A stretch of 63,658 bases of DNA, counting the filler, from Syncephalis fuscata S228 (lineage: Eukaryota; Fungi; Zoopagomycota), in NCBI GenBank assembly GCA_025786725.1. It is 4 parts of 4 records of this genome, joined end to end, with 100 filler letters (N's around TTAATTAATTAA, not from the genome) between each part and the next. Parts side by side here need not be neighbours in the genome. Positions count along the whole stretch, not along the records: positions 29,990 to 46,389 come from JAHLTZ010000203.1; 3 more parts are not named here. One strand, 5' to 3'. The notes beneath the pieces are model-generated. The model made no database searches and was not told the DNA's origin. It saw only the letters and a list, made by a program, of their open reading frames with translations. The position numbers and the translations under genes were made by a program. Positions 38,453-40,832 of the stretch are shown here, in pieces (position 1 is the stretch's first letter; every line of letters begins with the position of its first letter).

Positions 38453-40832
38453 TTAGACTGTGTTTATGAATATGCACAACATATCACATCTAGTTAGTGT
38501 ATAAATCAGGAATATATAACATTGCTTACAGACTGGTAATATAAATATTAGGACACAAACAGTGTATGATATATGCTTAGTATAGAAACAATTAATATAT
38601 AATACCGCTTACATGCTATTAATAAAAAATAAACATGCACATTGAATGCTATATGTTTAGAGTATGAAAACTAATACATAATGCCACTTACATGCTATTA
38701 ATGCAAGTTATTAGATACACATAATGCACGATATATATATTTAGCGCATAGTCAGTCAATATGCAATGTCGCTTACGATCTATCATTACAAGATATCAAA
38801 CATACAAGATGCATGGTATATGTTTAGAGCGGATAGTCAATACACAGTTTTACTTACTATCTATTGATACAGGTTATTGGATATGCATAGTTCATATCAC
38901 ATAGTTAGCGTATAGTTAATTAATAGACTGTGTCGCTTACTAGCTGTTAATACAAGTTGTTAAACACACAGATCGTATAATGTATGCTTAGTATATAGCT
39001 AGTGAGTATACAATGCCACTTACAATCTAACAATATAAGGTATTGGCCATACACAATGCATGGCATGTACTTAGCATGTAATTAGTAAATATATAATATC
39101 ACTTACTAGCTATTAATATGTGTATTAAATACACGTGGTTCATGGTATATGTTTAGTATATAGGTAGTTATTATACAAATACACTTACAAACTATTGATA
39201 TAAATTATTAGACACACACAATGCATGGTGTATGTTTAGTATATAGTCACTAATATACGATGCCACTTACTCCCTATCAATACATATTATTAAATATACA
39301 TGGTGCATGGCATATGCTTAATATATAGCTATTGCATACACAATATCACTTACCAGCTATCAATACAGGATGTTGGGCATTATATGCCATGTCATATGTT
39401 TAATGTATAAATAAATGATATACAGTATCACTTACGAGCTATTAATACAAGTTGTCAGACACAGACAGTGTGTAGCATGCGATTAAAGTACAACTCAATA
39501 TACGATTCACTTACAAGCTATTAATCAAAATGATTGAACACACACGATAAATGCCATATATTTAGTGTATAGTTAGGTAATGTACAATGCTATTTACCAT
39601 CTATTAGCACAGATATTGCACACACACGCAATGTATGATATATTAATATTGTATAGCCAATTAACATACAATATCACTTACTTTCTATCGATGCAAATTA
39701 TTAATTATATAATGCACGCCATTTTTTAGTAGATAGCTAATAGTATGCAATGTCACTTACGAGCTAATAATCCAAAGTATTGACCACATATGGCACATAG
39801 TATATGATTAGTATATAGCTATTAGTTATAGAGCGCAACTTACGGGCTACATTGCAAGTTATTAAACACAAACCGTGCATCTTATGTGTTAGTATTAGTT
39901 AATTAGCATGAAATGCCACCTACTGGCTTTGATACAAGTTGTTAGACACGCACAGTGCATAAAATATGTTTAATTTTATAATTAGTTAATACACAATGCT
40001 ATTTACCATCTAGTGACATAAGATTTGAATTATTGTAGCACATTTCATATGTTCAGCACATGGCTGACCAATATGAGATGCCACTTACCAGCTATTAATA
40101 CAAGTTGTTAAAAGTTACAACACATGTCATATAGTTGGCGCATGTCTAGTTAGTATACAATTCCGCTTACCTCCTATCAATAAAGCCATTAGAAATTACA
40201 TCACATGCCATATATTCAGCACATGGCTGCTTAATATAAATACTACTTACCAACTATTAATACATGTTGTTAGGCATAAACAGTGCATGGCATGTAGTTA
40301 AAGCATAGATAGCCAATATACAGTTCACTTACAGGCTGATAATACAAGATATTAAACATATATGGTGCATGGCATGTATTTAATATGTAGATAATAAACA
40401 TACACTGCCACTTACATGCTATTAATACGAGTTAGTAAACACACATCATCACATAGCTTATGCTTAATGTATAGCCAAGTAATATATAACGCTACTTACA
40501 TTCTAATGCTGTTTTATTAAACGCACACATTGCATGATATGTGTTTAGTGTATCATTAATTAGTATATAGTTATACTTACCCACTATTGATGCAAGTTAT
40601 TAGACATACAAAATAAATAGCGTATAATTAGCGCATAAATGATTAGTACATAATGCTACTTACTTTTTATTAGTGTTATTTAGTAATGTGAATAGCGTTT
40701 AACTAAATGAATAACTAGCTTTTGTAATGACAACATACCGCGACGAACTAGGACTAGTGTAGCATTCACCATGGATGTAGTAGCCACAAAAACTACAATG
40801 ATAGTACAAACGGTGGCAATAGAAAGCTTCAT
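38453..40832 (-). CDS. Microexon gene B: secreted Ser/Asn/Pro-rich prepropeptide from up to 29 exons, 27 of them 3-nt microexons
   Basis: Exon 1 40832-40739 encodes MKLSIATVCTIIVVFVATTSMVNATLVLVRR plus G. Microexons: [AAA 40664, acceptor reads TAA], TGG 40581, AAT 40500, CAT 40416, CCT 40333, TTG 40251, GAG 40171, CTG 40089, ATG 40007, CCA 39924, CCC 39844, CTC 39761, AAA 39682, ATG 39598, CTT 39515, CTC 39436, CTG 39354, GGA 39271, TTT 39189, CTA 39107, ATT 39024, CTA 38941, ATA 38858, ATC 38777, CAT 38692, CAT 38613, TCT 38530. Last exon 38457-38453 is TC+TAA. Joined frame is open: (EM or V)ESSFGADATPQNASPGISNSNNPSFF*. Confidence 0.82.
38458..40738. repeat. Diverged ~82-bp tandem array; intron plus microexon units of gene B
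   Basis: CTTAC-NNN-CT recurs every 79-85 nt on the + strand. Units resemble those of array A. Confidence 0.93.

What the first reader, a model, noticed from the sequence alone, without database searches (positions are those of the whole stretch)
38453..40832. Second one-codon-per-exon gene with the same architecture but a different peptide
Seen: same 94-nt leader exon ending CGT CGC G|GTATG, 27 units of ~82 bp with AG|NNN|GTA(A/G) and the same terminal design (2 nt + TAA). The spliced frame has no stop: EMESSFGADATPQNASPGISNSNNPSFF, Cys-free and S/N/P-rich. The architecture recurs 21 kb away with diverged introns but conserved splice sites, which argues for selection on splicing. Inference: this is a gene family whose payload is rewritten on a fixed scaffold.
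Basis: partly seen in the sequence, partly recalled or inferred. Interest (0 to 1): 0.93.

Follow-up and report, generated by a model that had tools for sequence, protein, structure and literature searches.

The report
One-codon-per-exon secreted peptide gene
A gene of the fungus-parasitic fungus Syncephalis fuscata spells out a small secreted peptide one amino acid at a time: public RNA data show 25 consecutive three-base exons, each separated by an ~80-base intron, joined exactly as predicted, an extreme gene layout for which I found no published description.

Summary
A 94-nt first exon (40832-40739) encodes a signal peptide and a short pro-piece ending in Arg-Arg. It is followed by 27 tandem ~82-bp units of the form AG|NNN|GTAAG, then a last exon that is 2 nt plus TAA. 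Contigs of one public run that behaves as RNA carry exon 1 joined to the third unit and then to consecutive 3-nt exons. They also carry the 3' UTR preceded by the last micro-exons. Contig lengths fit one continuous chain of 25 three-base exons, and partly spliced intermediates confirm single intron borders. The first two units lie inside intron 1 in the main form, so the peptide starts ESSFG, not EMESS. The host is Syncephalis fuscata (Zoopagomycota), and the NCBI annotation has no gene here. Introns are about 63% alike, splice signals are nearly invariant, and the triplets are close to random. Differences between two strains avoid triplets and splice signals (P about 0.009). A metagenome scan found dozens of analogous arrays depleted in stop triplets. 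Five have a signal-peptide exon ending in R or KR exactly at the splice site. My best reading is a Kex2-type secreted peptide precursor. The peptide itself and its function are inferred, not shown.

The parts
40833..40914 (-). 5' UTR (minimum extent)
   Evidence: The RNA contig (record 7, depth 365) runs 40914-40739 without a break. The stretch contains no upstream ATG.
40739..40832 (-). Exon 1: 31 codons plus 1 nt. It encodes a signal peptide, a short pro-piece and Arg-Arg, and the intron follows in phase 1.
   Evidence: Translation MKLSIATVCTIIVVFVATTSMVNATLVLVRR plus G. The exon is covered by the RNA contig and is joined at 40739 to the micro-exon chain.
40503..40738 (-). Intron 1 of the main transcript (236 nt). 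It contains two vestigial units (TAA 40660-40662, TGG 40581-40583).
   Evidence: The loose end at 40739 continues directly with AAT CAT CCT.... A minor form (depth 8.7) uses GTAAGT at 40663, the TGG unit and an alternative acceptor 6 nt upstream of AAT (tables 5 and 5c).
38530..40502 (-). Array of 25 three-base exons separated by 24 homologous introns of 76-82 nt. Highest coordinate of each exon: 40502 AAT, 40418 CAT, 40335 CCT, 40253 TTG, 40173 GAG, 40091 CTG, 40009 ATG, 39926 CCA, 39846 CCC, 39763 CTC, 39684 AAA, 39600 ATG, 39517 CTT, 39438 CTC, 39356 CTG, 39273 GGA, 39191 TTT, 39109 CTA, 39026 ATT, 38943 CTA, 38860 ATA, 38779 ATC, 38694 CAT, 38615 CAT, 38532 TCT.
   Evidence: RNA shows the first 10 and the last 8 exons (plus one base of TTT) letter for letter. 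Loose ends of 51 and 59 nt over an 80-nt chain leave a 30-nt overlap, which equals k-1, so the middle is implied. Single-intron joints 40009>40089, 39109>39189, 39026>39107 and 38779>38858 match the predicted borders.
38458..38529 (-). Last intron (72 nt)
   Evidence: GTAAGC...ACAG. It is removed in the RNA contig that joins TCT to TCTAA.
38330..38457 (-). Last exon: TC completes the final Phe codon, TAA follows (38453-38457), then the 3' UTR. Depth continues into the 38109-38295 bin.
   Evidence: RNA contig record 1 (depth 373) covers 38330-38451 and continues into the chain. The run's strain lacks base 38452.

Best explanation
This is a real, highly fragmented protein-coding gene of Syncephalis fuscata.

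- Transcript: a pre-mRNA of about 2.7 kb carries 26 canonical GT-AG introns: a 236-nt first intron, 24 tandem-repeat introns of 76-82 nt, and a 72-nt last intron.
- Splicing: the introns are removed one by one, in no strict order, so that 25 exons of exactly 3 nt are stitched between exon 1 and the last exon.
- Message: the mature mRNA holds a 57-codon ORF.
- Division of labour: exon 1 supplies the signal peptide, a 7-residue pro-piece and an Arg-Arg site. The micro-exon chain, together with 1 nt from exon 1 and 2 nt from the last exon, supplies the whole 26-residue mature peptide. The last exon supplies only the stop codon and the 3' UTR.
- Product (inferred): the peptide is released in the secretory pathway by signal peptidase and a Kex2-type dibasic protease, then secreted. 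It is a Ser/Asn/Pro-rich, Cys-free, acidic peptide with an N-A-S sequon, and a candidate effector or signal of this mycoparasite.
- Origin (inferred): the array grew by tandem duplication of an [intron + 3 nt] unit. Gain, loss or skipping of a unit never breaks the frame, so the peptide can change codon by codon while the splice scaffold is kept.

Shown: the anatomy, the splicing, the splicing intermediates, and the constraint on splice signals. Inferred: translation, processing, secretion, function and origin.
For: - Anatomy.
- RNA, main form: one search gives contigs at depth 365 and 373 that carry exon 1 or the 3' UTR fused to the exact predicted triplet chain. The intergenic bins 36800-38108 and 41101-41661 have no cover, so the run behaves as RNA.
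- RNA, intermediates: a contig covering 38858-39026 has introns 21 and 24 removed but 22 and 23 retained, so removal follows no strict 5'-to-3' order.
- Strain of the run: its variants equal the alleles of the NCBI S. fuscata assembly.
- Leader: a charged start, a 15-residue hydrophobic core, V-N-A before the predicted cut, then TLVLVRR (von Heijne's -3/-1 rule and Kex2 dibasic specificity are established knowledge).
- Constraint within the array: AG and GTAAGT carry about 2 bits, the triplets 0.27 bit and the flanks 0.65-0.84 bit.
- Age of the array: units are equally diverged at all distances, about 65% identity at lags 1-8, so the array is old.
- Constraint between strains: 0 of 32 differences fall in the 275 triplet and splice-signal positions (P = 0.009).
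- Introns are not structured RNAs: no Rfam match and no conserved pairing.
- Independent analogues in metagenome contigs: L037, L023, L095 and L013/L110 have a signal-peptide exon ending in R or KR exactly at the 5' splice site, followed by 3-nt exons.
- Stop depletion in those arrays: 11 stop triplets against 40-49 expected.
- Constraint in an analogue pair: between L013 and L110, triplets plus splice signals show 1 change in 124 positions against 66 in 1144 intron positions.
Against: - No protein or peptide evidence exists.
- The open frame of this one gene is not significant by itself (P = 0.12-0.33).
- The RNA evidence comes from one small run kept as contigs. Only 30 letters of each loose end were shown, so the middle six exons rest on contig lengths.
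- The run's type is recorded only as a guess ('RNA?').
- The syntenic interval of S. plumigaleata has no array, so there is no cross-species conservation.
- No homologue of the leader was found among predicted proteins.
Confidence: 0.75

Rival explanations
1. The transcript is spliced as shown, but the peptide has no selected function. A tandem repeat that happens to carry splice sites expanded inside the single intron of a tiny secreted-protein gene. The spliceosome removes each unit, and the inserted residues are tolerated neutral filler.
For: The open frame is not significant on its own. The sister species has no array at the syntenic site. The peptide looks disordered and low in complexity.
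Against: - Units are old and about 37% diverged, yet all 25 keep both splice signals.
- Strain differences avoid triplets and signals.
- Without the array, exon 1 joined to the last exon would encode only a signal peptide and pro-piece, with no mature product.
- The same modular design recurs in unrelated environmental arrays that are strongly depleted in stops.
Confidence: 0.12
2. The gene is a host gene whose useful products are the introns (small RNAs released from about 80-nt tandem introns, as in snoRNA host genes such as SNHG14). The spliced exon chain would then be a by-product.
For: Tandem homologous introns separated by minimal exons resemble snoRNA host genes (PMC11608373 abstract, found). 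Unspliced fragments were abundant enough to be assembled.
Against: - No Rfam family matches, even at E up to 1.
- RNAalifold finds no conserved pair among the 24 introns.
- C-box and D-box motifs are not repeated per unit: TGATGA occurs once and CTGA five times in the whole array.
- A signal peptide, a dibasic site and a stop placed exactly at the array's borders are unexplained by this model.
Confidence: 0.06
3. The gene exists to make many peptides from one locus. Regulated skipping of 3-nt exons, which always keeps the frame, would give a combinatorial set of secreted peptides, as proposed for schistosome micro-exon genes.
For: Every exon is symmetric, so any subset is in frame. The two first units are skipped in the main form, and a minor form uses TGG plus a 9-nt alternative exon. 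The two main contigs break in the middle of the chain, which may reflect a branch in the assembly graph.
Against: The two contigs carrying the complete consecutive chain have the highest and near-equal depths (365 and 373). No contig with an internal exon skipped was listed, although contigs drop rare variants.
Confidence: 0.07

Closest known systems
Schistosome micro-exon genes (MEGs)
   Same: Both have a first exon encoding a signal peptide and a body made of symmetric micro-exons, so that skipping keeps the frame. Both give secreted, largely disordered products of a parasite. MEG exons are given as 3-81 bp (PMC10526429 abstract).
   Different: - Here every internal exon is exactly 3 nt, 25 in a row.
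- The introns are short (76-82 nt) and are tandem copies of one another, whereas MEG introns are long (up to 5 kb).
- The host is a fungus, not a flatworm, and there is no sequence homology.
- The product is a 26-residue peptide behind a dibasic site.
Aphid 'bicycle' effector genes
   Same: They are a rapidly evolving putative secreted-effector family that is recognised by exon-intron structure rather than by sequence (10.1101/2021.09.24.461719 abstract). From my own knowledge, they have many micro-exons behind a signal peptide.
   Different: Bicycle exons are tens of bases long and the proteins are larger. No tandem intron repeat and no one-codon exons are described for them.
Single constitutive or alternative 3-nt exons (human MAP4K5, Drosophila hth, RPS24)
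   Same: They show that a spliceosome can define a 3-nt exon (PMC8632122, PMC7392893 and PMC12686416, found).
   Different: These are isolated exons inside ordinary genes. No report in the searched library describes a chain of them.
Recursive splicing at AG|GT ratchet points (own knowledge: Drosophila Ubx and long vertebrate introns)
   Same: In both, a 3' and a 5' splice site lie essentially on top of each other, so neighbouring splicing reactions must follow one another rather than run at once.
   Different: Ratchet points leave 0 nt, or a discarded recursive exon, and serve to remove one long intron. Here each step leaves 3 coding bases, and the order is not strictly 5' to 3'.
Fungal Kex2-processed secreted peptide precursors (alpha-pheromone type, KEPs, Ece1/candidalysin)
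   Same: These have a signal peptide, then a pro-region, then a dibasic site that releases short secreted peptides (PMC6339444 and PMC5784256 abstracts).
   Different: The known precursors carry several repeated peptides in ordinary exons. Here one peptide is encoded codon by codon across 25 exons, and cleavage has not been tested.
snoRNA host genes with tandem introns (SNHG14) and fungal introner-like elements (own knowledge: van der Burgt 2012)
   Same: All involve many homologous introns.
   Different: No RNA family or structure is present in these introns. The intron family occurs only inside this one array, not dispersed in other genes of the 37 kb of S. fuscata DNA examined or in the 120 environmental loci.

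Membership tests
Micro-exon gene architecture (MEG-like, as a structural class) | Most of the coding sequence for the mature product lies in micro-exons whose lengths are multiples of 3 | tested here: met
   25 exons of 3 nt encode 75 of the 78 nt of the mature peptide.
Micro-exon gene architecture (MEG-like, as a structural class) | A conventional first exon encodes a signal peptide | tested here: met
   The 31-codon leader has a hydrophobic core and a V-N-A cut motif. This was judged by rule only, because no signal-peptide predictor was available.
Micro-exon gene architecture (MEG-like, as a structural class) | Homology to, or taxon of, the schistosome MEG families; long introns | tested here: not met
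   The host is Syncephalis fuscata and the introns are 76-82 nt tandem repeats. The gene works like a MEG but is not a member of those families.
Micro-exon gene architecture (MEG-like, as a structural class) | Protein variation through alternative micro-exon use | tested here: inconclusive
   Variants were seen only at the 5' end of the array. Contigs hide rare isoforms.
Kex2-processed secreted peptide precursor | Signal peptide followed by a dibasic (KR/RR) site directly before the mature peptide | tested here: met
   The leader ends ...LVRR with the exon 1 border one base later. Environmental analogues end ...EKR...DKR or ...AR exactly at the splice site.
Kex2-processed secreted peptide precursor | Actual cleavage and secretion of the peptide | not testable with these tools
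   This needs peptidomics or a tagged construct.
snoRNA or small-RNA host gene | Each intron carries a conserved structured RNA (C/D or H/ACA boxes, or a hairpin) | tested here: not met
   No Rfam hit at E up to 1. The alignment fold gives 0 consensus pairs. Box motifs are not repeated per unit.
Introner-like elements | Near-identical introns dispersed in many unrelated genes | tested here: not met
   The nhmmer profile of the introns hits only the 27 units of the array in the piece, in L001 and L124, and hits none of the 120 environmental loci. The whole genome was not available.
CRISPR array (considered for the pattern hits with a constant triplet) | Constant repeat of about 37 nt alternating with unique spacers of about 35 nt | tested here: met
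   This applies to L025, L004 and L055 only: a constant repeat contains TAG-GGA-GTAAGT and the spacers vary. It does not apply to the S. fuscata array, where the whole unit is conserved except the 3 bases.

The most novel reading that the evidence does not exclude
One-codon-per-exon arrays may be a widespread, so far undescribed fungal way of building and rewriting short coding stretches.

- Mechanism proposed: tandem duplication of an [intron + 3 nt] unit creates peptides, linkers or hydrophobic segments one residue at a time. Splice signals stay under selection while the triplets are free to change.
- RNA-proven case: Syncephalis fuscata.
- DNA-level signature elsewhere: signal-peptide/KR peptide genes on a contig whose neighbour looks ascomycete, arrays between the ankyrin exons of a fungal NLR gene, and arrays upstream of Mucoromycota-type protein kinase exons.
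- Why it was missed: ordinary annotation and read mappers cannot place 3-nt exons, so the whole class has been invisible.
Probability: 0.5. Interest if true: 0.95.

Novelty: new variant of a known kind. Interest (0 to 1): 0.9.

Why it matters
- **Splicing mechanics.** The gene pushes the known limits of exon size and density. Twenty-five consecutive exons are each fully inside the footprint of the U1 site and the neighbouring 3' splice site. Adjacent introns therefore cannot be engaged at once, yet the mature mRNA is abundant. This makes a natural substrate for studying the order of intron removal, intron definition and what happens to junction marks placed 3 nt apart.
- **Gene evolution.** Frameshifts by unit gain, loss or skipping are impossible in this layout. 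That offers a simple route to new or fast-changing secreted peptides in a parasite.
- **Annotation.** The NCBI record calls no gene here, and aligners cannot map such reads. Similar genes are therefore likely missing from fungal secretome and effector catalogues. The metagenome scan suggests they are not rare.

Tried and rejected
- **Leader homologues:** the word-based search with the leader plus its read-through ORF found no candidate. The exhaustive HMMER search with the 31-residue leader gave 0 hits. These genes are not among predicted proteins.
- **Joined sequences:** Three-base exons cannot be searched singly.
- **RNA families and structure:** Rfam found nothing. The consensus fold of the 24 introns gave no pairs. 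snoRNA, mirtron or other structured-RNA readings were therefore rejected.
- **Synteny:** the S. plumigaleata interval between the orthologues of the two flanking genes (L122 11929-20181) has no array, no ~80-bp tandem repeat and no leader match. Thamnocephalis (L123) has none either.
- **Paralogue hunt:** walking 9 kb further along the S. fuscata contig (L124) found no second array. I could not scan the genome.
- **Pattern hits that are not this phenomenon:** arrays with a constant GGA triplet are CRISPR arrays. Arrays with constant TAA, CCT or ATC and 85-97% identical units are plain satellites.
- **Automatic leader finding:** it mostly failed in the environmental arrays, because contigs are cut or the first units are degenerate. 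Only the cases read by eye are claimed.
- **Open-frame test on this gene alone:** not significant.
- **Pfam on neighbouring ORFs:** only GDT1 was recognised.
- **Literature:** ten full-text searches found single 3-nt exons and MEGs, but no chain of 3-nt exons and nothing linking micro-exons to Zoopagomycota. The library does not cover subscription journals.
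Full report
**1. What is in the sequence**

The gene lies on the minus strand of the piece 29990-46389, which has 35% G+C.
- The ATG at 40832 opens a 94-nt exon. It translates to MKLSIATVCTIIVVFVATTSMVNATLVLVRR plus one base and ends G|GTATGT.
- Downstream, AG|NNN|GT[AG] recurs 27 times at 79-85 nt spacing.
- The last unit is followed by a 72-nt intron and an exon that starts TC TAA (38457-38453).
- The stricter motif AGNNNGTA[AG]G occurs 24 times on the minus strand, all inside the array. It occurs twice on the plus strand, outside the array, in the whole 16.4 kb.
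- The introns are copies of one another: mean pairwise identity is 63%, with a range of 39-78%.
- Identity does not decay with distance, staying near 65% at lags 1 to 8. The array is therefore old, not a fresh expansion.
- In units anchored on the exon, AG and GTAAGT carry about 2 bits per position. Flanking intron columns carry 0.65-0.84 bit, and the three exon columns only 0.27 bit.

**2. RNA evidence**

Only one public run (X1, 2017, kept as contigs, type guessed as RNA) holds the stretch. Laid on 36800-42400, it covers this gene and the neighbouring gene at 41676-42285. It leaves the intergenic bins 36800-38108 and 41101-41661 empty, so it behaves as a transcriptome.
- Record 7 (227 nt, depth 365) matches 40914-40739. 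It then runs on for 51 nt that begin AATCATCCTTTGGAGCTGATGCCACCCCTC. That is exon 1 joined to the third unit, followed by nine further consecutive triplets.
- Record 1 (181 nt, depth 373) matches the 3' UTR 38330-38451. It runs on for 59 nt whose shown part, read on the gene strand, is TCTAATTCTAATAATCCATCATTCTTCTAA. That is the last eight triplets, one base of the ninth, and TC TAA.
- The chain from AAT to TAA is 80 nt. The sum 51 + 59 - 80 gives 30, exactly the k-1 overlap of two neighbouring assembly nodes. The six middle triplets are implied by this, not displayed.
- Lower-depth contigs (3-35) are splicing intermediates. Joints 40009>40089, 39109>39189, 39026>39107 and 38779>38858 remove exactly introns 9, 20, 21 and 24.
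- One contig (38858-39026) has introns 21 and 24 removed but 22 and 23 retained. Removal therefore follows no strict 5'-to-3' order.
- In the main form the first two units (TAA, TGG) are skipped and lie in a 236-nt intron 1.
- A minor form (depth 8.7) uses GTAAGT at 40663, the TGG unit, and an acceptor 6 nt upstream of AAT. Its frame runs into a stop codon inside retained intron-1 sequence, before the 40663 donor.
- Further loose ends look like paralogues. One has the same first nine codons followed by a different hydrophobic continuation. Another is a different 81-nt spliced chain fused to an intron resembling intron 26.

**3. Organism and annotation**

- The neighbouring ORF (41669-42310) is 99% identical to a hypothetical protein of Syncephalis fuscata. 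S. fuscata is a fungus that parasitises other fungi (own knowledge); it belongs to the Zoopagomycota.
- The NCBI contig (L001) is 98.9% identical to the window, so it is another strain or haplotype. The variants in run X1 are those of L001.
- The annotation calls no gene between the two flanking genes. A chain of 3-nt exons cannot be placed by ordinary spliced aligners (inference).
- Between the two strains there are 32 differences inside the array. None falls in the 275 positions made up of triplets, AG and GTAAGT. The expected number is 4.4, giving P = 0.009.
- One leader difference changes Leu to Pro in the pro-piece.

**4. Reading of the product**

- The mature mRNA has no upstream ATG in the known 5' UTR and holds a 57-codon ORF.
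- Exon 1 has the n-, h- and c-regions of a signal peptide, with V-N-A before the likely cut. The residues TLVLV-RR follow.
- The border of exon 1 lies one base after Arg-Arg, and the last exon contributes only two coding bases and the stop. The micro-exon array therefore corresponds to the mature peptide ESSFGADATPQNASPGISNSNNPSFF.
- Signal-peptidase and Kex2-type cleavage are inferred from established rules and were not tested.
- The open frame of this gene alone is not significant (P = 0.12-0.33).

**5. Rivals**

- Intron-derived RNAs: there is no Rfam match, no conserved pairing and no per-unit box motifs.
- Neutral filler: this is hard to square with the retention of all 50 splice sites in units that are 37% diverged, and with the strain data.
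- Combinatorial exon skipping: it is possible, but only 5'-end variants were seen.
- Artefact: it is excluded by the letter-perfect match of two 30-nt stretches to a prediction that spans 18 junctions.

**6. Relatives and wider occurrence**

- The syntenic interval of S. plumigaleata lacks an array. Nine further kb of the S. fuscata contig hold none.
- The intron family occurs only in this array.
- Some of these hits are something else. Arrays with a constant GGA triplet are CRISPR arrays, and those with constant TAA, CCT or ATC are satellites.
- Of the arrays with at least 8 units, 47 environmental ones (46 distinct) have variable triplets. Their introns are 49-92% alike while their triplets are near random, at 22-57% per-base identity.
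- The 643 triplets of the 46 distinct arrays contain 11 stops against 40-49 expected (P = 5e-8 to 7e-11). Forty of the 46 arrays are stop-free against 19.7 expected.
- In the arrays that are not AT-rich, triplet position 3 is T-rich and G-poor. This is codon-like and opposite to the splice-donor preference.
- Five contigs repeat the S. fuscata design in phase 0: L037 (...LEKR|QNAPGPPREGG), L023 (...SLEAR|QVDIGYSAF...), L095, and the pair L013/L110 (...IIDKR followed by a Cys-rich chain). L095 has a leader homologous to that of L023 but a different peptide.
- L013 and L110 differ at 5.8% of intron positions but at only 1 of 124 triplet and splice-signal positions.
- Other arrays sit between the ankyrin exons of a PNP_UDP-NACHT-ANK gene (L022), or upstream of kinase exons on AT-rich contigs whose nearest Atlas clusters are Mucoromycota (L008). 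An ORF next to L013 resembles Ascomycota proteins (a lead only).
- None of these environmental arrays has RNA support here.

**7. Comparison with what is known**

- Schistosome MEGs are the closest known class: a signal-peptide exon followed by symmetric micro-exons of 3-81 bp (PMC10526429).
- This gene differs in having only 3-nt exons, short tandem-repeat introns, a fungal host and a dibasic-site peptide precursor.
- Single 3-nt exons are known (PMC8632122, PMC7392893). Ten full-text searches found no chain of them and nothing on micro-exons in Zoopagomycota.

**Verdict.** The splicing is shown. The coding and secretory reading is well supported but inferred. The novelty is high.

Noticed in passing
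L037 2799-3737; L023 (minus strand) 1454-3088; L095 (minus strand) 1394-2917; L013 12598-13960; L110 (minus strand) 6768-8300: These environmental contigs have the same modular design as the S. fuscata gene. A signal-peptide exon ends in R or KR exactly at the 5' splice site and is followed by arrays of 3-nt exons in phase 0. L023 and L095 share a leader but not the peptide. L013 and L110 encode a Cys-rich chain.
   Followed up: partly
L022 2427-7818: A fungal NLR-type gene (PNP_UDP, NACHT and ankyrin domains) has arrays of 21 and 9 AG|NNN|GTAAG units placed between ankyrin-repeat exons. The triplets would encode Arg/Glu-rich linkers. No RNA evidence is available.
   Followed up: partly
L008 90-3000; also L002 and L107: Very AT-rich contigs (17-20% G+C) carry arrays with a period of about 92-99 nt. 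Their triplets would spell mostly Ile/Leu/Met and lie directly upstream of a protein-kinase exon. The nearest Atlas clusters are Mucoromycota kinases, which suggests arbuscular-mycorrhizal fungi.
   Followed up: partly
L025 6881-9209; L004; L055: The splice-like search pattern also picks up bacterial CRISPR arrays whose 37-nt repeat happens to contain TAG-GGA-GTAAGT. This is a trap for any regex scan for micro-exon arrays.
   Followed up: yes
window 41666-42310 (minus strand) and 32553-33086 (minus strand): The gene next to the array encodes a lineage-specific protein. The NCBI model (P0001) starts with a signal peptide, and the gene is expressed in run X1. A distant paralogue lies 9 kb away (28% identity over 61 residues, shared motifs around H-C-x-W and Y-I-N-L). 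The array gene may sit among secreted-protein genes.
   Followed up: partly
window 42180-42252: The window lacks a T that L001 and the RNA contig have at 42252, which changes the N-terminal reading of the neighbouring gene. The NCBI model bridges this stretch with a 41-nt GT..AG intron, but the RNA contig (41676-42285) does not splice it out.
   Followed up: partly
window 40839-40842: An RNA contig diverges from the genome just upstream of the ATG, at a good acceptor (…TTTTAGCAGATTAG|). It is either an alternative upstream 5' UTR exon or a paralogue with the same leader.
   Followed up: no
L122 11929-20181 (Syncephalis plumigaleata): The interval syntenic to the array is 8.2 kb instead of 4.3 kb. 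It holds a different 273-residue gene and a 6-kb stretch without called genes, but no micro-exon array.
   Followed up: yes
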